Below, piece after piece: positions 20,101-40,143 of a stretch of 64,000 bases of DNA; position 1 is the first letter of the stretch; the number at the start of each line of letters is the position of its first letter. Location: the sequence record NC_070962.1. One strand, given 5' to 3'. The notes below the pieces were generated by a model, which did not search any database, was not told the origin of the DNA, and saw only the letters and a program-made list of their open reading frames with translations. Made by a program: the position numbers and the translations under genes.

Positions 20101-20499
20101 GGAAATACTCTGAGCATTTCTACTGATAAGTTCAATAATATCTTCCAAGTTTATGATATTGATAGAACTACAGAGTCTGTTCCAGGAATTGGAGTTACTG
20201 ATATCGTTAAGGTTACTACATTAGTAGAATATCCAATTGATCTTGCAGAAAATCTTGGCACATTTGACAATGATCAAGAAACTTTTGATTCTACCGTATT
20301 GACTTTTGATAATGGGGGTGAAGATAATGGTTACTTTGGAAACTTCTCTTGGGGAAGAATTAACTGGCATCCAACTAAGAGTAGAAAGCAACCTCTAGAG
20401 TTTACTTCTTATCATGAAAATGGTTTTGTTGGAATTTCTACTTCACCATTTATTCGTAGAACATTCCCTCTAAGAACTAAACTATATACTCAATATTGA
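8137..20499 (+). CDS. gp7: giant baseplate wedge initiator (gp7-like) with repeated beta modules and a YHYH-like domain
   Basis: N-terminus ESQIPDFINDEFPLFKDFLRQYF and FYKTKGT..GFRILFRVLY; position between gp6 and gp8; 4120 aa. Confidence 0.75.
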   Translation: MDISRIRLSQILESQIPDFINDEFPLFKDFLRQYFEANEIAGGSYDLLSNIDKYVNLNTLTLTPRDTRSTEDFEYDDTTLTVESTYGFPNKYGLLRLNPSFDGERYYGGEIVTYTSKTDTEFKGIVRNFSGITEVGDEVVFSDSVIDESSNFYYNGTFVQNLSSVFLVEFLNKLKSQIAPGFENRTLNYNVNDRLFLSRTSDFYKTKGTAEGFRILFRVLYNEPVDVIIPSTNIFESSASSNRKTRDLVLYVDDQETDYTDLILHRTIKQPTDSIDESSDLSAYGTITNVEKIERNGVIYYVVSLDSDYDKDISVSGTVFGEFVPTPTTKVTEDFKLNLDGSYPEFLNVDSTIGFDDASSLDVYNIINGETFVNTISYNLRTSTEFYGVTSEVAIPRGTLLSSRRYAFVEFDNRTVYFRVTGILSQIIPDKSSYFSEGDPIKFNSVGLKEDTKKYNDWTFNCNPTYNISNLELQDSINRRYKFNLDGNYDLSLFDKFFLIDNNNNSYNVIISARESLSEYVITSNSIIDLSARSFTIERKLNKANFDFFPEANNFVTDVQNVWRPIDYNDELFVASSSLPNYRNENLTTNDKRITFSANIPSDRSTNKELKIGQDATAQIPEKTHSFYTGDSIIYSEDDDDEENTNRLSIPNGRYYVTVVDNKTIKLSTSLNRVYTKEYVSITGNVTDNTFYYSDFFDIEKVLNIEEPFVLKSKRCIKRILPPIDQSTNETTKPGKIGIFKNGVELLNYKSKNNIFYGGLESIEVLSSGDGYDIINPPSLDIFDGSNADGLNNGGIGATGNFVVQGSVVDIKILGGGYNYTETPTVNVSGGNGKGCVIEPVMETYTHGVTIDASSGFNVGISSNTIISLEDHLFSPGEKILYNCELNNQEIGGLKNKAIYFVGVVDNTSFTLHKSIVDAKNNLNPIDITEFGEGNHKFDSVKKKKRIGSLNVTYSSDDFTYRKVSYDPSVVSTPIDYYTNAITIPSHGFNNGEIVIYESSTTEISGLSSGTSYYVTKVDNDSFKLSSLGIGTLPKNHYYNEKTFVEMTTPGVGRQYFRYPNIEVNITPSGQDVSSVEPQVLPIVRGQIKEVFLESNGVGYGCTNIFNYERQPQITAEPGKLASAKPFIVDGEIKGVIIQNSGQKYVSTPSVQIFTDGEGGFGADLIPIVDNDGRLSDVLVKNGGADYNDATEIEIVSAGSGAKFKAKIYNWNVNEVERALNSNQIYDDDGFLHQDSTIPIEDAEDHGLLQYTHCYAPRKLRQTIYNKKVVNGRTTFNPDLILDRLGREINSTSHSPILGWAYDGNPIYGPYGYTNRDGSGGVKLMQSGYRKRTLTNRPSVTVYPLGFFCNDYEWFSDGDLDEFNGRFCVTPDYPNGTYAYFATVGDNDSIFKNYKLPTFPYVIGDKFKSKPIEFNFVSRLNQDTFFSDLLGDDIPYNYINYNLIRNVTPHNLAGVDGKYNYIFDPSQYITVDSKVKSVTSGSVDNVIIFEGGKDFKVGDRIIFADSGEGTTRPVAKVASIGGTDATSVSVAVSSFNNAELVPSPSTGGVVAICSYPHNSYTGPGKINDLNNQSYFSDELIVYNRDLKIAGFGTDNIVIDLPSVTGIVTYINVFGLESTQNIIPVLPNDIFKIEYGLFNEEVKVLNIDFKNSRLRVQREVNGTIGTSYPVGTALSEDPRKFIIKNESPSDSSNRFNTQLYFNPKESVGVGIGTTLSISNPGAGSTQIFVAGDRIYLPNNTLRVNDKIYYEYDNGPITVESFGDNFNLQKDRPYYAYPFPNGYIGISSRPVGVGSTGPVGVGSITELLSFTGFGAGDNHSFYTRYNDVHAVDITTFEVTVNTSKNHNLVFDDPITVTCEPNIEKTLEVFYNQENAKFAVGKFDFVHADINPKFNTITLTNHGLDNGQKLILESTAPPGGMVNNGVYVVGVVNENTIKLYHTNNGGVVNIVNQSTGRLLVVNPQLNLIRNKTLKFDLSDFSLSYVRNNIRYPAFNLKFYRDKELTHEFLSSSKDKTFSVIKTGRIGVTLDANVKLICDDEFPTKLYYVLEPLKSTQVPVAYSLSSIDTDMNNVITFNNSPISGTYNVRKPTNTSFSYRIAERPDSDNYVTGLSTIRYSTISTTASGPINEVSFISTGSNLIKVPLIEKVDSISGVDSILFPRTDSIGIAKNIEINDIGFDFPTDPTLIPRAYTPSIYKIDPLTSIDSIDVLEKGYRYTILPDLVLLDGFTNKIVTDVDLRYIEEDGFKVDIVKNTKNLYDVEPRLLPINNTNGYKILTLTYDSGSKDATVILDVVGFSTITAWPFPVGSEFMVEGVVTKDPDNDEGYNSSDYNYKKLFTVKTADPNIGGQVPSFTFNMGDFVIKNSPGIFNDLITSGRVIPQSFFPQFKVNRIANKYFTDEIVTNGTSEDIVVSWDVKNELLKIFTSFPERYKVGDVMRGKTSQSSGTLTEVVGISSVSYITGASNAERYKPFDRKGFLNDETQRLHDSDYYQYFSYSLKSEVGITSWKEPVESLIHPAGFKKFSELQVISDKDDQIGISSLGIGADQNESGFLGISNFSSYYDLNCVHDIDLVTENNILNKTSDEIRFNSLILVDYFESIGNRVLIVDDISDQFNSNPRPTAFVTVDTFSLRKFRSKKYVMFTSNKKFPGERQMIIVNVLHNNTYGFLTQYGRVETNNIHGYFDVGVFEDNGLLLFYPLEYRYSDFSISGYQYAIANSITGVSTHYIGDSNSIGFAGIQTAYLPQGTSTSTKIVGIDSSYTSAKVLVTLESSDLQYYQYDEFNIVHDGTNIHNIEFSTLATDNFANQDVSLGIGTYQFEYNGNDVEVRLTPNSGLSTAYDVSSTVVAISNTSRTSIGSSLFNTTLTTVGLGTTVSISPFAGVNTSIQIIDFDPQYKGFNAYVSIEDMTNNIVQMSELVFTHNETDAYITEFGRVSNRGIFEDVGLGTFTTYVDGSTGRARLEFVPYPADPGFTREIEVRIFVGSLNLVDLGVSNSYYNYESGRFSTLYGDYTGTENDVKRSFELRHQGDLIFERVFDSTALGTTVSTDENVLILPNHFFVTGELVRYTVPNEDDIRVGIATTSVAGVGVTDKLPTDLYIVKVNDSKIKFADSAENALKFNPETLTLSSVGVGTQHKITSTNKDAKGIFTIDNMMQSPLVALAITTSVADDIALTETLINTAGITSFFANDIIQIDDEVMLIETVGVGTQDKVRVRRPWMGTELGIHTAGALVTKLKGDYQITGSVINFTSPPYGKVPITVDLNQFGVPFVDPSERDYTGITTNSYFHGRTFMRSGITDETEETYTKNYRFDDISTKFTGIRTAFDMTVNGQDVLGISTDNAIVLVKDIFQQPTRPGVSSIAGNYEFVEVGGKTKILFDGSISSDDFTAVDGQDINVPNLPIGGIIVNIGSTTGLGYQPLVAAGGTATISGFGSITSISIGNSGSGYRPGIQTHINVIAETSSSVSIIGYATALNGHITGVAITNPGTAYTSINPPRIRFDSPLSYTDIPLIYSSDSPNQGIGRTASIDMFVSRDTSVGEFKFNNNGYAYGQGEILTVAIGGTTGIPTDTSKTFDEFQITVNETHSDEFNSWAIGQLQQLDSLDDQFDGIRRVFPISFQGDRLSIRARPGSNIDVSATLLIFINDILQVPNQAYTFKGGSLIIFAEPIPKEYTSRIVFYRGTRDVDVEEVDIVEPIEVGDKVKIMSDIAFQTEDKRTVEDILSSDILLTNPYSGIGRLNDETIERPLMACKQTEDLFINGEYVGKDRRLYEPYIFPTTNLIQPVGIDTTVAWVEGTATFFDNKKENLAEKKLQQIQIISQDVTQVGFATVVISGLGSITSITISNPGTGYTFAPQIAIGPPAPGGTNATAECTIANGSINVINVTNNGAGYTGSNAPYVNIEPPRVSREPIRQVQYDGDFGTIVSVANTNVGVGSTALELSLYIPHDSVVRNLGVNDSGLTTSGITGLVTSYYFTASRTNVGNGITAFYNDGNTLSISTDKFNNIFQVYDIDRTTESVPGIGVTDIVKVTTLVEYPIDLAENLGTFDNDQETFDSTVLTFDNGGEDNGYFGNFSWGRINWHPTKSRKQPLEFTSYHENGFVGISTSPFIRRTFPLRTKLYTQY

Positions 20500-23461: not shown

Positions 23462-26400
23462 ATGCCACAACTCACTAACCTCAACACCTTTCCATATTTT
23501 GACGATTTTGATGAGTCAAAGAATTTTTATAAAGTTCTTTTTAAGCCTGGACAACCTGTTCAAGCTAGAGAATTAACCACAATTCAATCTTTATTGCAAA
23601 ATCAGATTGAAAATTTTGGAGACCATATTTTTAAAGAAGGTTCGGTTGTTATTCCAGGTTCTCTAGTAGTTAAACCAAACCAAATTACTTTAGAACTTGA
23701 AAAAACATTTAATGGACTAGATATTACCCAATATTTGCCATCTTTAGTTGGAAAAACTGTTGTAGGTGAAGATACTGGTGTTAAGGCAAAGATAGAGGCA
23801 TATCAAGGAACATACGTTTTTGTAAATGTTACTGAAACTGGACTAGATAACGAATCTCAGGATTTTATTGCTGGAGAAGCAATTTATATTGAAGAGACTA
23901 TCCCTTTAACTGATGCTGCGATTACTAGTTTTGTTGCTGGATCCTCAGTTGCATCAATTAGAGATGTTGCTGAGGGTTGTATTTCAAAATTAACAGAAGG
24001 TGTATTTTACCTTAAAGGATACTTTGTACAGGTTCCTGAGCAAACATTAATTGTATCTGTAGATGAACCAGAACCAACATTTAAACTTGGTTTTGAGATA
24101 AAAGAAAATTTTGTAACTTCATATGATGATCAAACATTATATGACAATTCCCAAGGATTTTTAAATTTTGCTGCTCCTGGCGCAGATCGTTTAAAAATAG
24201 ATGCAGAATTAATTGCGGTTATTGATGGGGATGAGATTCCTCAAAATTTTGTGGAACTTGCAGATGTTTTAAATGGAAGTGTTTTAACCTCAAAAGTTGA
24301 AAATCCTGAGTATAATATTCTTGCTGATGAAATGGCAAGAAGAACCTATGAGGAAAGTGGAGATTACTATGTAAAACCATTTACATTAGAGGTAAAAAAT
24401 ACATTACAAGATTTTAAAGGTAGTGATGGTCTTTATACTTCAGATGAAAGTACCTTAAGTGGTGAACCTCCAAGAGAAGATTTAGCTGCATATCAAATTT
24501 CTGCAGGAAAGGCATATGTTCAAGGTTATGAGGTAAATATTCAATCTGGTGTAGTTTTAGATATTGATAAACCAAGAACTACTAAAGAATTTAAACAGCA
24601 AGCAATTGAATATTCAACTGGGTCAACACTAAGACTTAATAATGTATATGGTGCTCCAAAAATTGGGTTATCAACATCATATACAGTATCACTAAGAAGT
24701 GAAAGAGTTGGTAGTGCTGCTACTATTGCTGCTGGAAAAGAAATTGGTTTAGCAAGGGTTTATGATTATGCTCTCGAAACTGGATCTTATGATACGTCCA
24801 ATTCTGCCACAAACTCTTGGGATTTAACTTTATTTGACGTTGTTCCATTCACCGATCTAAGTTTGAATGAAAATGTAACAACATTATCAACACCAACCTT
24901 TATCAAAGGTAAGTCTAGTGGTGCTGTTGGATTTTTAAGATATGATGTTTCTAGTTCTACTGGTATTATTACGGCATATAACGTAACTGGCAACTTCATT
25001 AAAGGTGAGGAACTTTTATTTGATGGGCAAGAAAGTGATAGAATTGTTTTGTCTTCTACTAACTATGGTATTTCTAATGTTAAATCAATTCATGGTGAAA
25101 TTGGAATTACTACATTCTCTGGTGACGTAAAACAAACTTCTGTATTAGAACTTGGACAATGTGACTTTAGTGGTGGTGGAGTTACAGTAGCACAAGCTGA
25201 CCGTGATTTTAGTAAAAACTTTGTAGTTGGTGATCTAATTTCTTTCAAAAAATCAGGAAATACAGTTCCTTCTTTCAATAGAGTAACTGCGGTAACTACA
25301 GATAATCTAACTGTAGAGGCAGTTCAAAGTGTTTCTGGTGTAGTTGATGGAGCATTGTTTGGTAATGGTACAACAAATGTATCTAAAGTAACCACCAGGT
25401 TAGGTGATAATGGATCCGACACCTTATACACACCTTTACCAAAGAAAAACATTGCGAATGTAGATCTAAAAGATGCTGTAATTACTATTAGAAAAACATT
25501 CAATACGTCAATTGTTGCTGATGCTACTGGAGGTAGAATAACGATTCTTCCAGCAGAACTAGAAACTGGTGAAACTTTCTTACCTTTTGATGAAGAGAGA
25601 TATATCGTTGTTAATAAGAATGGTCAAACAGAAGCATTAACTGAAGATAAGTTCACAATTACAAGTGGAAGTAGAGAGTTAATCATTAAAGGTTTGTCTA
25701 TTGTTGGTGATGCAACTCTAATTGCTACATTAAGAAAATCCCAGGTAAAGGCACAAAATAAGATTAAAAACAGAGTTAAGACGATTATTGTTGATAAATC
25801 ATCAACTGCTGGATCTGGAATTGGTGCCACAACTCTCAATGATGGTCTTACCTATGGAAACTATCCATATGGTACAAGAGTTCAAGATGAAGTCATTTGT
25901 CTTTTAGAACCAGATGTAACTAAGATTCATGCAATATATGAGTCTTCTACTACTGGATCTCCACAATTACCAAGACTTACCCTAAGTGATATTAGTAGTT
26001 TTAATGGTAGTGTTGAAGATGCACTAAATGGTGAGGAAATTGTTGGAACAACTAGTGGATGTGTTGCAGTTTTGGTTAATAAAATTTCATCTTCAACTGC
26101 TGAAGTTGTTTATATTAACGGTAAAAAATTCAATGTCGGTGAAGAAATTACATTTAAAGAATCTTCAATTACTGCTGATATTGATGTGGTTGTTGATGGA
26201 GACAATGACGTAACTGCAAAATATGTATTGAATGCTGGACTAAAATCTACTATTTACGATTACTCAAGAATTAAGAGAAAACCAAATATTCAAGCACCTA
26301 CAAAAAAATTAGCAATTGTATATGAATATGCAAACATTGATTCTACCGACACTGGAAATCTTTTAGTAGCAAATTCATATGAAAATTTTGACTACAAAGA

Positions 26401-29400
26401 CATACCTATTACAGATGGAGAAAAGCAGAGTGATATTTTAGATATTAGACCAAAAGTAAAATCATATTCTGTAGCAGAAAATGTAAGATCACCTTTTGAG
26501 TTTTTGGGTAGATCTTTTGCATCAACACAAAACTCAAATCTTAATGTATTAGCATCTGATGAATCTATCACTGTAGATTATTCAATATATCTTGGAAGAA
26601 TTGACAGAATCTATCTAACAAAACAAAAGTCTTTCCAAGTAGTTAAAGGAGTTCCAGAGGAATCTCCACAAAAACCAGTTCCATTGGAAAATGCTATGGA
26701 GGTTGCTACCGTAGCTTTCCCTCCATACTTAGAAAAAGTTCAAGATGCAAAAGTTTCAATTATATCTCATAAGAGATATCAAATGAAAGATATTGCTCTA
26801 TTAGAGCAAAGAATTAAAAATCTAGAATATTACACTCAACTTTCATTACTTGAAACAAATACTCAAAATCTTGAGATTAAAGATTCTGATGGTGCTAATA
26901 GATTTAAATCTGGTTTCTTTGTTGATAACTTTACTTCCGTTCAAAATCAAGTCAGCACTATTTCTGCCAAAAACTCTATTGATGCAAGAAATAATGAACT
27001 AAGGCCAGCATCTTATACTACACAATTAGACTTATTACTCGGATCTACACAATTAACTGGAATTAATGGTGAATTGGATCCAAATGCTGATCCAAGATAT
27101 GTTACTGATTTAATCGGTGAAAATATTAGGAGGTCTACAGTTGATCCTAATGGGTCTGTTGGTACAGATGGTATGGGTGTTATTACACTAGACTATGAAG
27201 AAGTTCCATTTATTAGCCAACTTACAGCAACTAGAGTTGAAAATGCTGCTCCTTACTTTGTAAATTTCTACAAAGGAAAAATTACACTAAATCCATCTTC
27301 AGATATCTGGATTGATCAAGCTAGAGTAGAAACTCAAACTATTGATGGTCTTATTGGTGGTTTTAGTCAAACAACTATTCAAGCTAATGCATCTGATTTA
27401 GATCCACAAGCAGGATGGTCTCCAATTACTTGGGGTGGATGGAATGAAAATTGGACTGGAACATCAACATCCGATACTGTTATTACTGCAAGTGACTCAG
27501 CAACTCTCCAAGGTGGTAGTGGAACAAGACCAGGCAGTACAACTGCTTCGGCATCTGTAACCACAAGAACAACAACAAGAACTGGAACTGCAACTCAATC
27601 TGGTACTTCTACAAGAGTTCAAACTACACCAGGAAATACTATTAATCTTGGGGATAAAGTTATTTCTTCTGATGTCTCATCCTTTATGAGATCTAGAAAT
27701 ATTGAAATTATTTCAAGAGGAATGAAACCTCATACAAGACTATATTCATTCTTCGGAACATCTTCAGTAACTAAGTATTGTGTTCCAAAACTGATTGAAA
27801 TTGAAATGATTTCTGGAACATTTAATGTTGGAGAAATTGTTCAATCTGCTGGAACTTCCTCAGTTAGCCCATCAGTAGTTTCCGATTCTCCATATATTGT
27901 ATTCAGAACCGCAGTTTGTAATCATAGAACTGGACCATTTAATGATCCACTGGATATCTACACGGTTAATCCATATACCCGTGAGGAGATGCCAGATCTA
28001 TATTCAACATCTTCAACTACGTTGAATGTCGATTTAACGTCTCTAAGTATTGCACCTATGGGTGATTATTATGGATATATTGCTGAAGGAATGATCCTTC
28101 AGGGAAGAAGTAGTGGTGCTAGAGCAAGAGTCAGTTCTCTCAGACTTACCACAGATAATGTGGGAACGATGCAAGCATCTTTCTACATTCCGAATCCAAA
28201 TGCTCCTGGAGCTCCAAGATTTAGAACAGGATCACTTACCTTTAAATTAAGTGACTCTCCATCTATTGATCCTATTGAAGGAACTGCATACACTGGTGGT
28301 CAGAAAGATTTCTTCTCATCTGGAACAATTCAAAATGTTCAAGGTCAAGTAATTTCAACTCGTAATGTTGAGTTTACCACTGCTCAAACTACTCAATCGA
28401 GATCTATTAGTGATGAAAGTCAATCTATTGTAGATATTGATGTTAATGTTGATGTAACACTACCTCAACCTGTACCAATTCCTCGTCCACAACCACAACC
28501 TAGACCTCAACCACAACCTAGACCTTCACCTAGACCTCAACCAAATCCAAGTCCTAGACCTCAACCTAGACCTGTACCTAACCCTACACCAAATCCACGT
28601 CCATCTCCTAGACCTAGACCAAATCCACGTCCTAGACCTCAGCCACGTCCTAGACCAAATCCTAGACCACAGCCACGTCCTAGACCAAGACCTAGACCCA
28701 GACCTAGACCAAGGCCACGTCCTAGACCAAGACCAAGACCTAGACCAAGGCCACGTCCTAGACCAAGACCTAGACCAAATCCAGCTCCACGGAATGATGA
28801 TGATGATCCATTAGCACAGTCTTTTACAGTTGGTAATTCTCAGGATCCAACTGGTATATTTGTTACTTCAGTCGATCTATACTTTAGAACGACATCAACG
28901 ACAGGTGAGACTTGTTTTGTTGAATTGAGACCAATGGTCAATGGATTCCCATCAAGTGATGAAATTTATCCATTATCTCAGGTAGTACTAAATGGATCTC
29001 AAGTTGAAGTTTCTGAAGATGCAAGTGTACCTACAACGGTAACATTCCCAGCACCTGTTTATCTTGAAGGAAATAAAGAACATTGTATAGTCGTTGGTTC
29101 AAACTCGACTGATTATCAACTTTGGATTTCTAGACTTGGTGAAGTAGATGTATCTACCTTATCCAGACCAGAATCTGAGCAAGTTCCTATTACTAAACAA
29201 TCTACACTTGGATCACTATTTAAATCACAAAATAGTAGAACATGGACTGCTAGCCAATATGATGATCTTAAGTTTAGTATTAATAGGGCAAACTTTGTAG
29301 AAAATGGAAACATTAGTTTCTATAATCCAGATTTAGCACTTGGAAATAGACAAGTTGCAACTTTGAAGAAAGATTCCTTAGATGTTTCTTCTAGAAGAAT

Positions 29401-31273
29401 TATTGTTGGACTTGGTACAACTGCAAGAAATTGGGGTGATGATATTGTTCCTGGTAATACCGTTATTCAGGATAATTCAAATGCATCTGGTAATTTTGTG
29501 ATGGGTCTTGGCATTGCTACTGGCACAATGTCAGTCACTAATGCTGGACTTGGACTCACACCTTCCACTGGTTTCTTCCAATACGACAATGTTCCACTAA
29601 CCAAACTAACTGGTAGAGGTGAAAATGCAACTGCAAATATTCATGTAAACAATGGTGTTGCAGCTGCTGCTACAATCTCTGATGGTGGTAATGGATTCAA
29701 AGTTGGTGATGTTCTAACTGCTACCATTGGTGGTGGAGTTGGTAGAAATCTGCAACTTTCCGTGACAGATACTTTTGGTATCAGTGAACTCATTCTTGAT
29801 CAAGTTCAGGGTGACTTTAAAGTTGGTGGTGGAAATACTCTAAGATACATCAATTCAAGTGGTGTAACTACCGAGTTTACTGATCAAGGATCAACAGATG
29901 TTCTAACAGCACCAAGAATAGTAACTGACGGATTGCACATTAAGGTCAATCATCTAAATCATGGTATGCATTCTGATACTAATAATGTTGTTATTCAAGG
30001 TGTTACTTCAGATGTCCCTGTAGTAAGACTTGAAGGTGATTATGATAGAACATCAACATCTGATCTTGTTATCTCCGATGCATCAAACTTTGAGAATTTT
30101 GAAGGAGTTGGTGTTGGAACCACCAATCCAGGATATATTAAAATTGAAAATGAAATTATTTCCTATACATCAGTAACTGGCAATACTCTTGGTGGTATTA
30201 CACGATCTGTAGATTCAACTTTTGCTGGTGGATATGAAGATCAATCAATTGTGTCTAAGTATGAGACATCAGGTATTTCTTTAAGAAGAATTAATAAAAC
30301 CCATGCTTTACAAGATGCAACTATTTCGGAAAGTAAGGGTCTTGATCATTACAATCTAAAAATTGATACATCAGAAAATGGCATTGATAGGTCAAATTCC
30401 ACTTCTTTCCCAACTTTATATTTGAATCAATCAAAATCTACTGGTGGTGAATCTGTAACTGCAACTCAGAATATCCATTATGAAATTATGCAACCTGTTG
30501 TTCAAACCATGGTTCTACAAAGAACTAATTTGACTGCAAGAGCAAGAACAGTGACATCAACAAGTATTGATGGTAATGAAGTGTCATTCTTAGATGCTGG
30601 TTATGAAAATGTCGTTCTAAATGACGATAATTATTTTGATACTCCAAGAATGATTGCATCCAAGACAAATGCCGATTCATTATTAGCAACATTACCTGGA
30701 AATAAATCATATGAACTTGAATTGAACATGAGATCAGCTGATCCAAGACTTTCACCTGTCATTGACTTAGATAGAATTGGGTCCATCTTTGTTTCAAACA
30801 GAGTTAATAATGTAGTTACTAATTTCAATACCGATCCACGTGTTGCAACCGTAGATGATGATCCAAGTGCATTTGTTTACGCAACAAAAGCAATCGGTCT
30901 AGAAATTCCCGCAAATAATATTAAATTACTATGTGCTGCATACATTAATAACTTCTCCGACATTAGAGCATTCTATGCATTAACTAATGATCCATCAGAG
31001 GATTTAATTTACTACCCATTCCCAGGTTATGATAATTTACTTGAAACTGGTCAGGTAATTGATTCTTCTAAGAACAGTGGTAGACCTGATAAGTTGGTTC
31101 CACCAACAGACAATAAAGGATTTGCATCTACTGCATTAGTATTCAAAGATTATACCTTTACTATTGAAAATCTACCGTCCTTCAAGTTCTTCAGTGTGAA
31201 ACTAGTTGGAACCTCAACCAACCAGTGCTATCCACCAAGAATTCGTGACCTAAGAGCAATCGCATTCGCATAA
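23462..31273 (+). CDS. VrlC/DUF4815-like large virion structural protein
   Basis: PYFDDFD..KNFYKVLFKPGQPVQARELT, FAAPGADRLKI, NRFKSGFFVDNF, DPLAQSF and a terminal PRIRDLRAIA; carries a Pro/Arg tract. Confidence 0.8.
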   Translation: MPQLTNLNTFPYFDDFDESKNFYKVLFKPGQPVQARELTTIQSLLQNQIENFGDHIFKEGSVVIPGSLVVKPNQITLELEKTFNGLDITQYLPSLVGKTVVGEDTGVKAKIEAYQGTYVFVNVTETGLDNESQDFIAGEAIYIEETIPLTDAAITSFVAGSSVASIRDVAEGCISKLTEGVFYLKGYFVQVPEQTLIVSVDEPEPTFKLGFEIKENFVTSYDDQTLYDNSQGFLNFAAPGADRLKIDAELIAVIDGDEIPQNFVELADVLNGSVLTSKVENPEYNILADEMARRTYEESGDYYVKPFTLEVKNTLQDFKGSDGLYTSDESTLSGEPPREDLAAYQISAGKAYVQGYEVNIQSGVVLDIDKPRTTKEFKQQAIEYSTGSTLRLNNVYGAPKIGLSTSYTVSLRSERVGSAATIAAGKEIGLARVYDYALETGSYDTSNSATNSWDLTLFDVVPFTDLSLNENVTTLSTPTFIKGKSSGAVGFLRYDVSSSTGIITAYNVTGNFIKGEELLFDGQESDRIVLSSTNYGISNVKSIHGEIGITTFSGDVKQTSVLELGQCDFSGGGVTVAQADRDFSKNFVVGDLISFKKSGNTVPSFNRVTAVTTDNLTVEAVQSVSGVVDGALFGNGTTNVSKVTTRLGDNGSDTLYTPLPKKNIANVDLKDAVITIRKTFNTSIVADATGGRITILPAELETGETFLPFDEERYIVVNKNGQTEALTEDKFTITSGSRELIIKGLSIVGDATLIATLRKSQVKAQNKIKNRVKTIIVDKSSTAGSGIGATTLNDGLTYGNYPYGTRVQDEVICLLEPDVTKIHAIYESSTTGSPQLPRLTLSDISSFNGSVEDALNGEEIVGTTSGCVAVLVNKISSSTAEVVYINGKKFNVGEEITFKESSITADIDVVVDGDNDVTAKYVLNAGLKSTIYDYSRIKRKPNIQAPTKKLAIVYEYANIDSTDTGNLLVANSYENFDYKDIPITDGEKQSDILDIRPKVKSYSVAENVRSPFEFLGRSFASTQNSNLNVLASDESITVDYSIYLGRIDRIYLTKQKSFQVVKGVPEESPQKPVPLENAMEVATVAFPPYLEKVQDAKVSIISHKRYQMKDIALLEQRIKNLEYYTQLSLLETNTQNLEIKDSDGANRFKSGFFVDNFTSVQNQVSTISAKNSIDARNNELRPASYTTQLDLLLGSTQLTGINGELDPNADPRYVTDLIGENIRRSTVDPNGSVGTDGMGVITLDYEEVPFISQLTATRVENAAPYFVNFYKGKITLNPSSDIWIDQARVETQTIDGLIGGFSQTTIQANASDLDPQAGWSPITWGGWNENWTGTSTSDTVITASDSATLQGGSGTRPGSTTASASVTTRTTTRTGTATQSGTSTRVQTTPGNTINLGDKVISSDVSSFMRSRNIEIISRGMKPHTRLYSFFGTSSVTKYCVPKLIEIEMISGTFNVGEIVQSAGTSSVSPSVVSDSPYIVFRTAVCNHRTGPFNDPLDIYTVNPYTREEMPDLYSTSSTTLNVDLTSLSIAPMGDYYGYIAEGMILQGRSSGARARVSSLRLTTDNVGTMQASFYIPNPNAPGAPRFRTGSLTFKLSDSPSIDPIEGTAYTGGQKDFFSSGTIQNVQGQVISTRNVEFTTAQTTQSRSISDESQSIVDIDVNVDVTLPQPVPIPRPQPQPRPQPQPRPSPRPQPNPSPRPQPRPVPNPTPNPRPSPRPRPNPRPRPQPRPRPNPRPQPRPRPRPRPRPRPRPRPRPRPRPRPRPRPRPRPRPNPAPRNDDDDPLAQSFTVGNSQDPTGIFVTSVDLYFRTTSTTGETCFVELRPMVNGFPSSDEIYPLSQVVLNGSQVEVSEDASVPTTVTFPAPVYLEGNKEHCIVVGSNSTDYQLWISRLGEVDVSTLSRPESEQVPITKQSTLGSLFKSQNSRTWTASQYDDLKFSINRANFVENGNISFYNPDLALGNRQVATLKKDSLDVSSRRIIVGLGTTARNWGDDIVPGNTVIQDNSNASGNFVMGLGIATGTMSVTNAGLGLTPSTGFFQYDNVPLTKLTGRGENATANIHVNNGVAAAATISDGGNGFKVGDVLTATIGGGVGRNLQLSVTDTFGISELILDQVQGDFKVGGGNTLRYINSSGVTTEFTDQGSTDVLTAPRIVTDGLHIKVNHLNHGMHSDTNNVVIQGVTSDVPVVRLEGDYDRTSTSDLVISDASNFENFEGVGVGTTNPGYIKIENEIISYTSVTGNTLGGITRSVDSTFAGGYEDQSIVSKYETSGISLRRINKTHALQDATISESKGLDHYNLKIDTSENGIDRSNSTSFPTLYLNQSKSTGGESVTATQNIHYEIMQPVVQTMVLQRTNLTARARTVTSTSIDGNEVSFLDAGYENVVLNDDNYFDTPRMIASKTNADSLLATLPGNKSYELELNMRSADPRLSPVIDLDRIGSIFVSNRVNNVVTNFNTDPRVATVDDDPSAFVYATKAIGLEIPANNIKLLCAAYINNFSDIRAFYALTNDPSEDLIYYPFPGYDNLLETGQVIDSSKNSGRPDKLVPPTDNKGFASTALVFKDYTFTIENLPSFKFFSVKLVGTSTNQCYPPRIRDLRAIAFA
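28463..28792 (+). repeat. Pro-X dipeptide repeat tract (110 aa), including a pure (PR)17 run at 28673-28774
   Basis: Read directly from the sequence. Synonymous codons vary (Pro cct/cca/ccc; Arg aga/agg/cgt). Confidence 0.95.
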
Positions 31274-35213: not shown

Positions 35214-35668
35214 TGGGAAAATTTAATGATTTGAACGAGACTTTTAATATTGAAGAAGATGCACCTATTGTTGAGGTAGATGCTTCTTCTGAGATTGTTG
35301 AGGAATCTAAAAAAGAAAAACCAGTCAAGAAAGATGATGTAACAAATGATTACGAATATACAAGAGGTAATCTATATTCAATTATCGAAAAAGGACAGGA
35401 AGCAATAAACGGCATACTTGAGTTAGCACAAGAAACAGAAACTCCAAGAGCATATGAAGTTGTTGGACATTTGATTAAGAATGTTTCTGATGCTACTGAT
35501 AAATTATTAGATCTTCAGAAAAAAATGCATGAGTTGGAGCAAGATACTAAGAAGCAGGCACCTACAACCGTAAATAATGCATTATTCGTAGGATCAACTG
35601 CAGAATTATCAAAACTTTTGAATAAAAATGCTTTTGAAAATATACAAAATGAAACCTTGAATAAATAG
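35213..35668 (+). CDS. gp16: terminase small subunit gp16
   Basis: DYEYTRGNLY..IEKGQEAI, PRAYEV..LIK and NNALFVGSTAEL. Confidence 0.9.
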   Translation: MGKFNDLNETFNIEEDAPIVEVDASSEIVEESKKEKPVKKDDVTNDYEYTRGNLYSIIEKGQEAINGILELAQETETPRAYEVVGHLIKNVSDATDKLLDLQKKMHELEQDTKKQAPTTVNNALFVGSTAELSKLLNKNAFENIQNETLNK

Positions 35669-35706
35669 ACAAAAGAAGCTTTTGAGTAACTTTACGCGGA
35701 GTTGAG

Positions 35707-38700
35707 ATGAATACAAGTCCAACAATTAGGTTAAAAAGATCTCTAACTGCGGGATCTGTTCCTAGTCTAGAACAGTTAACTTATGGTGAGTTAGCTATTA
35801 ACCATTATGATGGTACGGTGTTTGTTCGTCAAGATACTGAGGGTGTAGGAATCTCAACTAGAGTTGTTACAGTCGGTGCTGGTAAAAGTATTGGTAATAC
35901 TTGGTTTGTTACTGGTGCTGGTGATGATTTGAATAGTGGTTTATCTCAACAAGATGCTTTAGCATCTATTAAACAAGCATCCATATATGCACAACCTGGT
36001 GACACTATTAAAGTGTCTGCAGGTTACTATGTAGAAAATAATCCAATTGTACTTAGGGATAATGTATCTGTTGAAGGATTTGAACTAAGAAACTGTTTCG
36101 TTGCTCCAAATAACCCAAATCAAGATTTATTTCATATCAATAATGCTTGCCATTTAACGGATTTGGCATTTGTTGGTAAAGGTGCTGATATTGGTGGTGG
36201 TTCTAAAGGTGTTCCTTCTGGTGGATCGGAACCAGGATTCCTCGGTGAACCAATGGAATATGGGAAAGCAGTTGTTGCTTTCGTTCCATTACTAGGTGTT
36301 GCTNCAGATAGATATTTCGACGGTGCAAGATTAATTCGTCAGAATGCAGATTATATTGCTGGTGAAGCCGTTGGTTTTCTCACCAGTGGATTTAGTGGTA
36401 TTGCTGGATCTCACAGAGCACAGGATGCTGCAAGACTTATTGATCTAAACGCAGAATATATTGCAGCAGAAGCAGTAGGATTTATCACCAGTGTCAACTA
36501 TGCTGGTGGTGCATTTACAATGTCCTTTGGTACAGCAAGAAATTGCCAAGATGACATTCATGATGTACTAGAAGCAGTTGCTCACGATCTAAGAGCAGGA
36601 TATAAAGATGGTACTCAAGCAAACAGCAGATCTGTAGGTGCTGCACAATCTTACTTTGTTGGTGGAGCATTATCTCATATCTTAGGTGCTGGTGTTTCTG
36701 AGGCAACAATTGCAGCAATGGATCGTGCTGCTGGTATTGCAACCTTTGTTATCAATAACAAACCATATGGATTTGAAAATGTTGGTTCTGGTGTAACTAT
36801 TACTGCATTTGAGTATACACCACTTACTGGTGTTTCAACTGTAACAACATTGATTGGTCATGGATTAAGTACTACTGATCACGTTTCACTTGCTGGACTT
36901 GCATTTACTTGTGATACTGAGCATTCTGGTGTAACAACTACCATTTTCCCTGACGGAAGTAGCCCTTCTGGACATATCTTCAAGATTGATGCTGATGCAT
37001 TATTTAATAGCAATCAATTCGTTATTAATGTAGGTATCTCTACAATTGCACATAGTTATACCCCAAGTTCTGGTACTGCTACTACAGTTTTTCAATATAG
37101 CACTTTTGAGCAGCAGTTTGATACTGGTGCTGCTGCAGGAACTCCACTTCGTGGTGAAAACGTTGTAGGAAATGGAATTTGCCTCAACGTCAATAATGAC
37201 ATTACAGAACTAGTAGGAATTGTAACCAGTGCAATTGGTGCAGGTAATACTGATAGTCTTCCAGGAATTACAACTGGTATGAGACTGGATCAGAATAAGT
37301 GCCGTCGTGATGTTGCAAAAATTTGGAAGTCTGTTTGTTATGATATTACCCGTGGTGGTAATACAAAGGTCGTTGGTGCAGGTAAGTCTTACTATGATGC
37401 TAATGGAAATAAACTTTCAATTCTCGTCGATCCCGATGAATTTGAACAGTCTGTTATTGCACTAGAATATTCTAAGGATATTGCAAGAAGAATCGTTAAC
37501 AACGTAAGGGATGGTTCTTATACTATTGGAACCGCATTTAGTATTAGTGGAGCAAATTATTCTCCAACAGCAGGTATTCTTACTGTTACTACTAACGTTG
37601 GACATGGTTTAACAGCAAAAGATACCGTTAAACTTTCTGGTCTTGCATTTAGTTGTGCTACTCACAATAACAGCATTGGTGTTTACGACTTCCAGTATGA
37701 TAGACAGTCTGGATTCAGCACTGTCATTCTAGATAATGATCATGGACTAAGTTCTGGAGATGAGTTTGAGCTACGCAACCTCACATTTAGTTGTGGTGAT
37801 TCTGGTCTTGGACCAGTAGTAAACGTTAGTAATGTGGTATATGATGAGAACGTAGGTATTATTACTGTTACGACTTCATCAGCATCTGGTGTTTTTGCGG
37901 GTGAACCAGTACAACTTAAAAATATTGCGTTTACTTGTGCTGCAGAACATGCTGGTGTTACGACAACTATTTTCCCAGATGGTTCAAGTCAGAATAATAT
38001 TAATGGATATGGATATGATGTATTTACAGTCCTTGCAGTAAATAGTGCAACAGAATTCCAAGTCAATGTTGGACCTTCAACAATTGCACACACATATGAT
38101 ACTGGTGGTACTGTACAAGCAGGTGTTACAACTACAGTATTCCCAGACGTTCAAAGCAATGATTATGTCTTTGATGCTTATGTAGGAACTGCAGGAACAG
38201 TCATCTACACTAATGTAGGTATTTCTACAATTGAGCATACTTATGCTTCTGGTGGTGAAGTAAGAATTGGTGTCACTACAACAATCTTCCCTAACGGTGG
38301 AGTATTTGGTGATTGTTTTGAAGTTCAGGATTATGTATCTGACACTCAAGTTAAAATTAATGTTGGTATATCAACATTCCTCCATGTTTATGAAAGTGGT
38401 GGCACTATTCAAAAGACAAGAACCTTCAGACCAGATATTGGTCAGATTAGAGACGTAAGCATTCAAATTGATTCTGATACGGGTAATAATAATACTGTTG
38501 GTAACTGTAAGAACGTTATCTCTGCAATGAACACTGCAGTTGGTATTGCCACAGCAATTATTGAAGATGGTCTCAGAACACTTCAAGAACCTCTCTATCT
38601 AACTCCAACAAGTGCAGGATACAATCCATCAAATGGTGAATTGCAATTCACTTTAGTGGGTCATGGATTAACTACTGGAGACAAAATTAAAGTTGCTCCA

Positions 38701-40143
38701 AATTCTATAGTATTTACTTGTGGTTCTGATGGAAATATTACTCAAATTGGATATCCAGACAAAACAAGTCCAATTTATGATAAATTTACACAAATAAAAT
38801 CTTATACCTCAGATACTTTCACAATTGATGTTGGAATTTCACCAGAAACTTCTACTCATACATTTGTTTCTGCAGCAACTTCTGCAGTGAACTATGGTGG
38901 TGCTGGTATTTCTACAAGATTCCCAGGAAATGATGGATTAGGTTCTGACTTTGAGAATGATGTATCTTTCTCTCCTGGTACTGATGGTCCAGTTCTAAAG
39001 GGTCCTTATATTAGAAACTGTACTAACTTCATTGAAAACAGCATCGGTATGAGAATCGATGGATTTGATGCTGATCCTGGTGATAAGGATGAACTAGGTG
39101 TACAAGGATCAATGAGTGTTGACTCATTCACTCAATACAATCAGGGTGGTATCGGAGTATCCATCACAAACGGTGCATATGCTCAGTTGGTGTCTATCTT
39201 CACCATCTGCTGTAATGAGGCAATTGTAACCCTCTCTGGTGGTCAGTGTGACCTTACAAACTCCAACTCTTCATTCGGTGAGTTTGGTCTAGTTTCTAAG
39301 GGTGTTGGTGATGAGACTTCTAGCTCTAACTATAGACAAACTGCTGAAGTTGTAAAACCAGGTAATCCTGGAAGAACAGTTGAACAGGGTGTTTATGATA
39401 TTGGTGATAAAAAGGTTGTTTTGACTGGTGTTGGAACTCAAAGACCTTATGATGGTCAGACCCTATTCTTTGATGAACTTTACTACTCTGTAGAAAAAGT
39501 TAAAGTTACAAATGGGGGATCTGGATATCAAGGTGCTGTACCATCAGTTACATTTAGTGATCCATCAGGTCCAGATGGAATTACTGCACAGGGTATTCCA
39601 ATTATTGAAGATGGTGTCGTTACCGACTTCCTAGTTGCTAACTCTGGAACACAATATCAAGTCGATTCTTTCCCATCAATTACAATTGGACCACCTCCTT
39701 CTGGTGGAACTCAGGCAACTGCTGAAGTTCAAAGAATGCAACCACTATACTTTAAGGTTGCTTCTGCAACACTCCCCCATAATGGAATCTCAACTATCAC
39801 AATGAGTCAGGGACTAAATAATGATTTAACAGGTGGTGAAGTTGCATATATAACTCGTCAGAGTTTGCAAATTACATCCTCTCACTCATTTGAATATGTT
39901 GGTGCGGGTAATACAATCCTCACCGCAAGACCTTCAGTTGGAGGTATCATTATTCAAGATAATGAAGTTGTTCAAGAAGATGGTGGTCTCGTAGTTTATA
40001 CAAGTACGGACCAAGCAGGTAACTTCAGGATTGGTGATGGTATTCAAATTGACCAAGCAACTGGAACCATCTCTGGTCGTGTTTATATTAAATCATTGTT
40101 CAACAGCGTTACACCATTCATTCTAGCACTCGGAGGAAACTAA
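35707..40143 (+). CDS. large virion fibre/structural protein with nested repeats (1478 aa)
   Basis: Fibre-type N-terminus (LKRS.TAGSVP...GELAIN..DG); beta-helix-like segment; helical repeats (RY/AxDAARLI..NA.YIA.EAVGF twice); FxC / GVTTTIFPD / NVGISTIxHxY modules. One ambiguous base at 36304; TAAATA at 35662-35667. Confidence 0.7.
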   Translation: MNTSPTIRLKRSLTAGSVPSLEQLTYGELAINHYDGTVFVRQDTEGVGISTRVVTVGAGKSIGNTWFVTGAGDDLNSGLSQQDALASIKQASIYAQPGDTIKVSAGYYVENNPIVLRDNVSVEGFELRNCFVAPNNPNQDLFHINNACHLTDLAFVGKGADIGGGSKGVPSGGSEPGFLGEPMEYGKAVVAFVPLLGVAXDRYFDGARLIRQNADYIAGEAVGFLTSGFSGIAGSHRAQDAARLIDLNAEYIAAEAVGFITSVNYAGGAFTMSFGTARNCQDDIHDVLEAVAHDLRAGYKDGTQANSRSVGAAQSYFVGGALSHILGAGVSEATIAAMDRAAGIATFVINNKPYGFENVGSGVTITAFEYTPLTGVSTVTTLIGHGLSTTDHVSLAGLAFTCDTEHSGVTTTIFPDGSSPSGHIFKIDADALFNSNQFVINVGISTIAHSYTPSSGTATTVFQYSTFEQQFDTGAAAGTPLRGENVVGNGICLNVNNDITELVGIVTSAIGAGNTDSLPGITTGMRLDQNKCRRDVAKIWKSVCYDITRGGNTKVVGAGKSYYDANGNKLSILVDPDEFEQSVIALEYSKDIARRIVNNVRDGSYTIGTAFSISGANYSPTAGILTVTTNVGHGLTAKDTVKLSGLAFSCATHNNSIGVYDFQYDRQSGFSTVILDNDHGLSSGDEFELRNLTFSCGDSGLGPVVNVSNVVYDENVGIITVTTSSASGVFAGEPVQLKNIAFTCAAEHAGVTTTIFPDGSSQNNINGYGYDVFTVLAVNSATEFQVNVGPSTIAHTYDTGGTVQAGVTTTVFPDVQSNDYVFDAYVGTAGTVIYTNVGISTIEHTYASGGEVRIGVTTTIFPNGGVFGDCFEVQDYVSDTQVKINVGISTFLHVYESGGTIQKTRTFRPDIGQIRDVSIQIDSDTGNNNTVGNCKNVISAMNTAVGIATAIIEDGLRTLQEPLYLTPTSAGYNPSNGELQFTLVGHGLTTGDKIKVAPNSIVFTCGSDGNITQIGYPDKTSPIYDKFTQIKSYTSDTFTIDVGISPETSTHTFVSAATSAVNYGGAGISTRFPGNDGLGSDFENDVSFSPGTDGPVLKGPYIRNCTNFIENSIGMRIDGFDADPGDKDELGVQGSMSVDSFTQYNQGGIGVSITNGAYAQLVSIFTICCNEAIVTLSGGQCDLTNSNSSFGEFGLVSKGVGDETSSSNYRQTAEVVKPGNPGRTVEQGVYDIGDKKVVLTGVGTQRPYDGQTLFFDELYYSVEKVKVTNGGSGYQGAVPSVTFSDPSGPDGITAQGIPIIEDGVVTDFLVANSGTQYQVDSFPSITIGPPPSGGTQATAEVQRMQPLYFKVASATLPHNGISTITMSQGLNNDLTGGEVAYITRQSLQITSSHSFEYVGAGNTILTARPSVGGIIIQDNEVVQEDGGLVVYTSTDQAGNFRIGDGIQIDQATGTISGRVYIKSLFNSVTPFILALGGN

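What the first reader, a model, noticed from the sequence alone, without database searches (positions are those of the whole stretch)
36799..38415. Matryoshka domain nesting in the 1478-aa fibre protein (A-A-A-B-B-B)
Seen: one intact module at 36799-37080 consists of half A (Y...G..TVTT..GHGL...D.V.L.GLAFTC) followed by half B (GVTTTIFPD...NVGISTIAHSY..GT). Downstream the halves are not alternating. Three A halves (starting at 37543, 37675 and 37816, each ending FxC) are followed by three B halves (starting at 37954, 38122 and 38269, each beginning GVTTT[IV]FP). The simplest reading is that each new copy inserted into the post-Cys loop of the previous one. Inference: recursive domain insertion that builds a telescoping stalk, an unusual way to lengthen an adhesin.
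Basis: partly seen in the sequence, partly recalled or inferred. Interest (0 to 1): 0.7.

Follow-up and report, generated by a model that had tools for sequence, protein, structure and literature searches.

The report
Self-nested beta-barrels in cyanophage fibre
A virion fibre protein of the marine cyanophage S-SCSM1 carries a small beta-barrel domain nested inside copies of itself three deep, and close relatives carry two or four levels (distant ones eight or more), so this looks like a simple way for a phage to build protruding arms of different size.

Summary
Gene SSCSM1_26 (window 35707-40143, 1478 aa, Synechococcus phage S-SCSM1) has five A halves and five B halves in the order AB / AAABBB / AB.

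Evidence that A and B form one domain:
- A single AB unit folds as one compact domain (AF2 pTM 0.73).
- It matches six-stranded insertion barrels (E1 FCCH, P22 I-domain, endosialidase barrel) over nearly its whole length. The match is at fold level only.

Evidence for nesting:
- Treating A as an open bracket and B as a close bracket, 94 of 121 homologs give perfectly balanced words. Of 16 distinct equal-count architectures, 15 are balanced, against 2.6 expected by chance.
- Syntenic orthologs come as AABB, AAABBB and AAAABBBB.
- The middle pair of this protein is a contiguous AB module in all 23 AABB-class orthologs.
- A-half and B-half similarities correlate best under nested pairing (r 0.70, against 0.45 for first-with-first and 0.27 for random).
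- Junction linkers are 1-3 aa.

Limits: the tools return no coordinates, so the predicted contacts could not be read. Stalk geometry and adhesin function remain inference.

Recursive self-nesting has a precedent in the SI3 insertion of cyanobacterial RNA polymerase beta'. I found no description of it for this module or for phage fibres.

The parts
35707..40143 (+). Gene SSCSM1_26, 1478 aa, virion fibre-like protein (GenBank: 'long tail fiber protein (virion protein)'; RefSeq: 'baseplate wedge subunit'). Intact ORF. One N base at 36304 gives X at aa 200.
   Evidence: PHROG 17885/3442 hits
36787..37083 (+). Stand-alone AB module 1 (aa 361-459): A 361-404, B 408-459, with a 3-aa junction.
   Evidence: AF2 of aa 355-460: pLDDT 79.5, pTM 0.73. 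Foldseek hits to E1 FCCH, P22 I-domain and endoNF barrel.
37531..38412 (+). Three-level nest AAABBB (aa 609-902).
37531..37662 (+). Outer module, A half (aa 609-652). Inferred partner: B 855-902.
   Evidence: bracket matching; best matches are partners in the AABB, AAABBB and AAAABBBB classes and form a contiguous module in some distant homologs
37669..37800 (+). Middle module, A half (aa 655-698). Inferred partner: B 806-853.
   Evidence: its orthologous halves form a contiguous AB module in all 23 AABB-class homologs
37813..37944 (+). Inner (leaf) module, A half (aa 703-746), contiguous with B 750-804.
   Evidence: absent from AABB orthologs
37954..38118 (+). Inner (leaf) module, B half (aa 750-804).
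38122..38265 (+). Middle module, B half (aa 806-853).
38269..38412 (+). Outer module, B half (aa 855-902).
38593..38886 (+). Stand-alone AB module 5 (aa 963-1060), divergent B half of the Y-P-D-K type.

Best explanation
The repeat unit is one beta-barrel domain of about 95-105 aa. The A half supplies the first three strands and ends in an invariant Cys. The B half supplies the last three strands and starts with the G-x-T-T-x-x-F-P-D motif. The N and C termini of the unit lie next to each other, so it can sit inside a loop. Its own loop between strands 3 and 4, just after the Cys, accepts an insert.

In SSCSM1_26 this loop of one module (A 609-652 / B 855-902) holds a second module (A 655-698 / B 806-853), and the same loop of the second holds a third, contiguous module (aa 703-804). 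The chain runs out through three A halves and back through three B halves. This gives an arm of three barrels that projects from the helical and beta-helix scaffold of a virion fibre protein.

Shown:
- The halves and their order.
- The balanced-bracket rule across homologs.
- Depth 2, 3 and 4 in syntenic orthologs.
- A single module is predicted as one compact domain with an insertion-barrel fold.

Inferred:
- The physical pairing of the split halves.
- The arm shape.
- That the leaf (tip) modules, the most variable parts, touch the host surface, and that gain or loss of a level is a quick way to change reach or valency.
For: 1. Five A and five B halves in the order AB/AAABBB/AB.
2. Balanced-bracket words in 94 of 121 proteins. 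Of 16 distinct equal-count architectures, 15 are balanced against 2.6 expected. Depths seen are 1, 2, 3, 4 and 8, and deeper in giant proteins.
3. Orthologs of 1373, 1478 and 1582 aa sit in the same gene order and carry AABB, AAABBB and AAAABBBB.
4. The middle pair is a contiguous module in all 23 AABB-class orthologs. The window's extra residues versus AABB are one A-sized and one B-sized block, separated only by the 11-aa B-start motif that all copies share.
5. The correlation of A-half with B-half identity is 0.70 under nested pairing, 0.45 under first-with-first, and 0.27 +/- 0.02 under random pairing.
6. Junction medians are A-to-B 2 aa, A-to-A 3 aa and B-to-B 1 aa.
7. Each half is predicted as only three strands. 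A single AB unit gives pTM 0.73. It aligns over about 100 of its 106 residues to E1 FCCH (TMq 0.51-0.54), the P22 I-domain (0.50) and the endoNF barrel (0.44), all natural insertion domains.
8. In P0060-type relatives the same loop holds about 350 aa of other sequence.
9. Cys is 100% conserved, and the flanking motif is at least as conserved in host modules as in leaf modules.
10. Leaf modules are the most variable parts among eight AAABBB orthologs: 0.73-0.82 identity, against 0.94-0.96 for the middle module.
Against: - No coordinates or contact map could be obtained, so the pairing A609/B855 and A655/B806 is not seen directly.
- The nest model has only pTM 0.42. The first ~20 aa of each B half have low pLDDT.
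- My model and the BFVD model of the same protein superpose poorly (TMq 0.23).
- Foldseek E-values for the fold match are weak (0.035 or worse). Pfam E1_FCCH is below its cut-off for this protein.
- One homolog (P0026) has AABBBB, two A against four B.
- 27 of 121 strings, and most strings in the more distant set, are unbalanced. This is largely because the B model misses a divergent B type: 85% of 'orphan A' downstream segments carry the aromatic-Pro hallmark against 15% of controls. Fragments also contribute.
- The oligomeric state is unknown, so inter-chain pairing is not excluded.
- The similarity statistics reflect co-inheritance as well as contact.
Confidence: 0.8

Rival explanations
1. 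A and B are two independent repeat types of a fibre shaft, for example separate layers of a trimer. Each was amplified in tandem on its own, and they do not pair.
For: In the sequence they simply appear as three tandem A followed by three tandem B. Many phage fibres are built from short trimeric repeats (general knowledge). The nest model has low pTM. P0026 has unequal numbers.
Against: Equal counts and bracket order hold in 94 of 121 proteins, and 15 of 16 equal-count architectures are balanced against 2.6 expected. A never occurs without a B-like segment downstream in most 'orphan' cases. Each half has only three strands. An AB unit gives pTM 0.73 and matches single barrels over its whole length. 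Depth classes change A and B numbers together.
Confidence: 0.06
2. A and B halves do pair, but in serial (crossed) order: first A with first B, and so on. Alternatively they pair between chains of a trimer by domain swapping, rather than as a nest within one chain.
For: Balanced counts alone do not distinguish nested from crossed pairing. The oligomeric state is unknown. No contact map was available.
Against: The middle pair's orthologs are contiguous in AABB proteins, and the window's extra material lies between them. Nested pairing gives r 0.70 against 0.45 for serial pairing. Junctions of 1-3 aa fit a guest whose termini meet at the host loop, but they would force long crossings in serial pairing. 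Mixed words such as A A B A [350 aa] B B are simple under nesting.
Confidence: 0.1
3. The nest topology is right, but it arose by separate tandem duplications of A halves and of B halves through unequal recombination between repeats. It did not arise by insertion of whole modules.
For: At depth 4 the extra pair (third A, second B) flanks the innermost module instead of being contiguous. P0026 looks like an in-frame loss of two A equivalents by recombination between two A halves. All junction motifs are shared, so event boundaries cannot be fixed.
Against: This route needs an intermediate with an orphan half at every step. The innermost module is gained or lost as one block in two separate lineages, the window group and the P0041/P0048 group. 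The two inner modules of depth-4 proteins are each other's closest paralogs in both halves: A 47%, B 72%.
Confidence: 0.2

Closest known systems
SI3 insertion of cyanobacterial RNA polymerase beta' (nested sandwich-barrel hybrid motif domains)
   Same: Recursive insertion of small beta-rich domains of one fold into each other. PMC13114784 reports eight domains in a six-level nest in Prochlorococcus rpoC2. The sequence signature is the same: first halves stacked, then second halves in reverse order.
   Different: It is a different fold family. No RNA polymerase chain appears among the 50 best Foldseek matches listed for either model. The protein is an enzyme subunit, not a virion fibre. Here depth is polymorphic among close orthologs (2, 3, 4) and reaches 8 or more in relatives.
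E1 ubiquitin-activating enzyme FCCH domain (Pfam PF16190; PDB 2v31, 6dc6)
   Same: Best structural match of the single module: TMq 0.51-0.54 over 100-109 columns. It is a small beta-barrel that is itself an insertion domain with adjacent termini. There is a weak Pfam match to the A half, and a relative (P0070) reaches the cut-off.
   Different: Sequence identity is 14-19% and Foldseek E is 0.035 or worse. The window's Pfam score is 14.8 bits against a cut-off of 29.5. The match is no evidence of homology or of any ubiquitin-related function.
P22 coat protein I-domain and the beta-barrel domain of phage endosialidase endoNF
   Same: Both are six-stranded barrels inserted into a host domain of a phage structural protein, with fold-level matches (2m5s TMq 0.50; 3gvj TMq 0.44). 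UniProt names some module-bearing cyanophage proteins 'Endosialidase' or 'Endosialidase beta barrel domain containing'. From my own knowledge, the endoNF barrel carries a sialic-acid binding site, which makes a lectin-like role a reasonable lead.
   Different: There are no sequence-level matches. Those domains occur once per protein and do not host copies of themselves.
Beads-on-a-string stalks of tandem Ig-like or FN3 domains in adhesins and phage fibres; nested heterologous domains in the pilus adhesin RrgA (from memory)
   Same: Extension or decoration of a surface protein by adding small beta domains. In RrgA the domains are inserted one inside another.
   Different: Tandem arrays are ABABAB in sequence and extend the chain end to end. 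Here the chain returns to its origin. RrgA nests different folds to two or three levels. These comparisons were not checked with the tools.

Membership tests
Recursive nested domain-insertion architecture (A1-B1-C-B2-A2 type, as in RNAP beta' SI3) | Host domain is discontinuous in sequence, with its two parts flanking the guest | tested here: met
   The orthologous halves of the middle pair are contiguous in 23 AABB orthologs. In the window they are separated by 107 aa that form a complete module.
Recursive nested domain-insertion architecture (A1-B1-C-B2-A2 type, as in RNAP beta' SI3) | A guest is itself a host (two or more levels) | tested here: met
   AAABBB gives three levels by bracket matching. 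Relatives have 2, 4 and 8 or more levels.
Recursive nested domain-insertion architecture (A1-B1-C-B2-A2 type, as in RNAP beta' SI3) | The split halves are seen packed into one domain in three dimensions | not testable with these tools
   Structure prediction gives no coordinates or contact map. There is only indirect support: three strands per half, and pTM 0.73 for a contiguous unit.
Sandwich-barrel hybrid motif (the SI3 domain family) | Fold or sequence match to hybrid-motif domains | tested here: not met
   No RNA polymerase or lipoyl/biotinyl-type chain appears among the 50 best Foldseek PDB matches listed for either model. There is no Pfam hit.
E1_FCCH (Pfam PF16190) | Pfam score at or above the gathering cut-off (29.5 bits) | tested here: not met
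   The window nest scores 14.8 bits, E 0.03. The relative P0070 scores 29.5 bits.
E1_FCCH (Pfam PF16190) | Same fold over the whole domain | tested here: inconclusive
   TMq 0.51 and TMt 0.49 to the isolated FCCH 2v31 over 109 columns, but E 0.08 and rmsd 5.7 A.
Endosialidase beta-barrel domain | Sequence or fold match to the endoNF barrel | tested here: inconclusive
   3gvj_A gives TMq 0.44, prob 0.94, E 0.13. There is no Pfam hit at E up to 1. UniProt names for relatives appear.
T4-type long tail fibre protein (the record's annotation) | Homology to characterised long tail fibre proteins, or a solved relative | tested here: inconclusive
   PHROG 17885 'tail fiber protein' (E 4e-53 and 2e-192) and baseplate-wedge PHROGs match the N terminus. 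No PDB sequence match was found. The gene lies between terS and terL. The record's note says virion protein.

The most novel reading that the evidence does not exclude
This barrel family is a general self-nesting building block of marine phage virions. An invariant Cys/His-flanked loop acts as a universal socket, so whole modules can be added or removed in single steps. This would give rigid out-and-back rods whose length, from one to at least eight barrels, is a heritable and fast-evolving dial for how far the phage's binding tips reach from the fibre. It would be a second, independent and deeper example of recursive self-insertion besides RNA polymerase SI3, and the first in a virus particle.
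Probability: 0.35. Interest if true: 0.78.

Novelty: new variant of a known kind. Interest (0 to 1): 0.62.

Why it matters
Proteins usually lengthen by adding domains side by side. Here the same small barrel appears to be inserted into itself again and again.

- **A readable signature.** The sequence order (first halves, then second halves in reverse) can be read like brackets. That gives a simple rule for annotating hundreds of giant, unannotated phage structural proteins.
- **A natural series.** Otherwise near-identical orthologs with depth 2, 3 and 4 offer a way to study how domains tolerate insertion.
- **A lead on host recognition.** Abundant marine cyanophages may vary the outer parts of their fibres this way.
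- **A second case.** It adds a virion example to the only well-described case of deep recursive nesting, cyanobacterial RNA polymerase SI3.

Tried and rejected
- **Pfam scan** of the protein and its pieces gave only sub-threshold hits (E1_FCCH, DUF1565). Four relatives gave little more.
- **PDB sequence searches** with the long piece, the C-terminal piece and a three-module profile found nothing meaningful.
- **Reading the pairing from the AF2 model** was not possible. Only pLDDT, pTM and secondary structure are returned, and no model file appears in /data.
- **A deep alignment for the innermost module** (A3, 80 rows) aligned badly: only 19 rows covered the query. I dropped it and folded the first stand-alone module with alignment A4 instead.
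- **Foldseek of the nest against BFVD** found the same protein but with TMq 0.23, so it gives no confirmation of the inter-module arrangement.
- **Fixing the exact boundaries of the inserted segment** by alignment failed. Two-gap and one-gap solutions differ only in where the shared 11-aa B-start motif is placed.
- **A coupling analysis between halves** was considered and rejected. It would largely repeat the orthology signal already used.
- **'A-only' arrays in distant proteins** were considered as evidence that A is an autonomous domain, then rejected. The gaps after such A halves are 40-70 aa and carry the B hallmark.
- **Recent duplication at the DNA level** is rejected.
- **Assembly artefact in the window** is rejected. 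The sequence is identical to MK867354.2, and dozens of metagenomic orthologs share the architecture.
- **Literature searches** for nested or recursive insertion in phage fibres found nothing.

Full report
**Where we are.** The window is the first 64 kb of Synechococcus phage S-SCSM1 (MK867354.2, Kyanoviridae, a T4-like cyanomyovirus). The match is 100% identical. The finding lies in gene SSCSM1_26 (35707-40143, + strand, 1478 aa). GenBank calls it 'long tail fiber protein (virion protein)' and RefSeq calls it 'baseplate wedge subunit'. The ORF is intact. One N base at 36304 gives an X at residue 200. The gene sits between the small and large terminase genes, after gp13, gp14 and gp15 homologs.

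**The observation.** It holds.
- The translation, a motif scan and HMMs built from the copies give A halves at aa 361-404, 609-652, 655-698, 703-746 and 963-1007.
- The same scans give B halves at aa 408-459, 750-804, 806-853, 855-902 and 1010-1060.
- The order is AB / AAABBB / AB, with five of each.
The three A starts fall within each A half, 1-4 residues after its HMM start and 5-9 residues upstream of the conserved Tyr.
- No other ORF of the window carries either half.
- The copies are old. Halves are 22-57% identical to each other within the protein. The only notable DNA repeat is 58 nt at 79% between the two contiguous (leaf) junctions.

**Is A plus B one domain?**
- Each half is predicted as only three beta strands.
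- A single contiguous unit (aa 355-460, about 43 informative alignment rows) gives mean pLDDT 79.5 and pTM 0.73. That is one compact domain, not two loosely tied ones.
- Its best PDB matches cover about 100 of its 106 residues. They are all small barrels that occur in nature as insertion domains: the FCCH domain of E1 enzymes (TMq 0.51-0.54), the I-domain of the P22 coat protein (0.50) and the barrel of endosialidase endoNF (0.44).
- These are fold-level matches with weak E-values. Pfam E1_FCCH is below its cut-off for this protein, and no PDB chain matches by sequence.

The test therefore had to be comparative, and it came out clearly.

1. *Bracket rule.* I wrote A as an open bracket and B as a close bracket for the window protein and 120 homologs. 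This gives a perfectly balanced word in 94 of 121 cases. Of the 16 distinct architectures with equal counts, 15 are balanced, against 2.6 expected if the order were random. Words include AABB, AAABBB, AAAABBBB, ABAABB, AAABABBB and one 16/16 word of depth 8.
2. *Length classes.* The classes of 1373, 1478, about 1580 and 1685 aa differ by whole modules. The first three carry AABB, AAABBB and AAAABBBB at the central position. Examples of depth 2 and depth 4 lie in exactly the same gene order as the window gene. They are therefore orthologs that differ in depth.
3. *Middle pair.* The middle pair of the window (A 655-698, B 806-853) is a contiguous AB module in all 23 AABB-class proteins. What the window has in addition is one A-sized and one B-sized block between them. 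These are separated only by the 11-residue B-start motif common to all copies. This is what a whole-module insertion after the Cys would leave.
4. *Pairing statistics.* Over all module pairs, A-half identity and B-half identity correlate at r 0.70 under nested pairing. The figure is 0.45 under first-with-first pairing and 0.27 +/- 0.02 under random within-protein pairing, with a maximum of 0.35 in 200 trials.
5. *Junctions.* They are very short: medians are A-to-B 2 aa, A-to-A 3 aa and B-to-B 1 aa. This fits a guest whose two ends meet at the host loop.
6. *Other inserts in the same loop.* In the P0060 group the loop holds about 350 aa of other sequence, inside an outer module that also holds a complete inner module.

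**Exceptions and limits.**
- P0026, from one contig, has AABBBB. Its first nest A looks like a fusion of two A types, that is an in-frame loss of two A equivalents. It may be a real variant or a collapsed assembly.
- In the more distant set from the exhaustive search, many strings are A-rich. That search found 434 representatives at E up to 0.001 among 1.84 billion.
- This excess of A is mostly a failure of my B model. A halves there are followed by 40-70 aa. Of 179 such segments, 85% carry the aromatic-Pro hallmark against 15% of controls, and 150 score above 5 bits with the B model.
- The nest model itself has pLDDT 74.6 but pTM 0.42, with low confidence in the first ~20 residues of each B half.
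- It superposes poorly on the BFVD model of the same protein (TMq 0.23). The way the barrels sit on each other is therefore unknown.
- The similarity statistics measure co-inheritance as well as contact. Inter-chain pairing in a trimer cannot be excluded.

**How copies were added.**
- The innermost module is present or absent as a block in two separate lineages: the window group, and P0041 versus P0048.
- At depth 4 the two inner modules are each other's closest paralogs (A 47%, B 72%). The one missing from the window is the outer of the two.
- This fits a module copied into its own loop followed by faster change of the host copy. It does not exclude two separate half duplications.

**Likely working.**
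- The invariant Cys and the motif after it flank the socket. They are at least as conserved in modules that hold a guest as in leaf modules (Cys 100% in both; Pro 99-100%; His 96-98%). They look structural rather than like a tip binding site.
- Among eight depth-3 orthologs, the leaf modules are the most variable parts: AB1 0.76, inner A/B 0.73/0.82, AB5 0.78. The enclosed middle module is among the most conserved (0.96/0.94).
- I therefore favour a projecting arm of three barrels whose tip, together with the two stand-alone modules, meets the host surface. Depth would be an easily changed parameter. This function is inference.
- Because the chain returns to its origin, the nest makes a side arm. 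It does not lengthen the fibre along its own path.

**Comparison with what is known.**
- Recursive nesting of one fold has a precedent. A 2026 survey of domain insertions describes eight hybrid-motif domains in a six-level nest in the SI3 region of Prochlorococcus RNA polymerase beta' (PMC13114784).
- The module here is not of that fold. No such chain appears among the 50 best Foldseek matches listed for either model.
- My literature searches found no account of nesting in this module or in phage fibres. The S-SCSM1 paper does not discuss the gene.
- Among isolated phages, only S-SCSM1 has a close ortholog. Synechococcus phage ACG-2014f genomes carry several module-bearing genes, including an ungapped 38% match to the whole nest.
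- I rate it a new variant of a known kind.

Noticed in passing
homolog P0026 (1487 aa, one JGI contig): It has the unbalanced architecture AB AABBBB AB. Its first nest A half looks like a fusion of an outer-type start with an inner-type end. This would be an in-frame loss of two A equivalents from a depth-4 form, leaving two B halves without partners. It may be a real variant or a repeat collapse in assembly.
   Followed up: partly
window 36310-36510 (aa ~202-268) and aa ~330-355, ~495-520, ~920-945 of the same protein: There is an internal duplicate of a helical stretch. Similar helical stretches each precede a barrel module or the nest. This suggests a larger repeating unit made of a helical piece plus barrel(s).
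   Followed up: no
window 35917-36081 (aa 71-125) and about 38960-39490 (aa ~1085-1260): The N-terminal part gives a sub-threshold DUF1565 hit, which would be the start of a right-handed beta-helix. The C-terminal part looks like beta-helix rungs. If both belong to one beta-helix, the roughly 900 aa between them, barrels included, would itself be an insertion.
   Followed up: no
window 36899-36956 and 37925-37982: The two contiguous (leaf) A-to-B junctions share 79% nucleotide identity over 58 nt, more than any other pair of copies. The stand-alone module and the innermost module also have the most similar B halves, at 57%.
   Followed up: partly
proteins P0121 (4057 aa), P0129 (5469 aa), P0047 (1845 aa; locus L004 1439-6976): These giant metagenomic proteins carry 30 or more halves and nests 8-10 deep. 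P0129 has nine A halves spaced by exactly 2-3 aa, followed later by seven B halves spaced by 0-1 aa. P0047 lies next to an HNH gene and another protein with a faint E1_FCCH hit.
   Followed up: partly
window 35630-35689: An imperfect 25-nt repeat (2.5 copies, A+T rich) lies in the short spacer between the small terminase gene and the fibre gene. It may be a regulatory region.
   Followed up: no
window 8137-20499 and 23462-31273: Two giant structural genes (4120 and 2603 aa, annotated baseplate wedge subunit and VrlC-like) contain no A or B halves. Module-bearing giant proteins of other cyanophages are, however, annotated as baseplate wedge proteins.
   Followed up: partly
window 36304, 41177, 41471: There are single N bases in the window. 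The first gives X at residue 200 of the fibre protein.
   Followed up: yes
B halves, last conserved column: A Gln near the end of the B half is the top residue in 92% of host-module B halves, against 61% of leaf-module B halves. In a nest this position lies next to the next host's socket. Its meaning is unknown.
   Followed up: no
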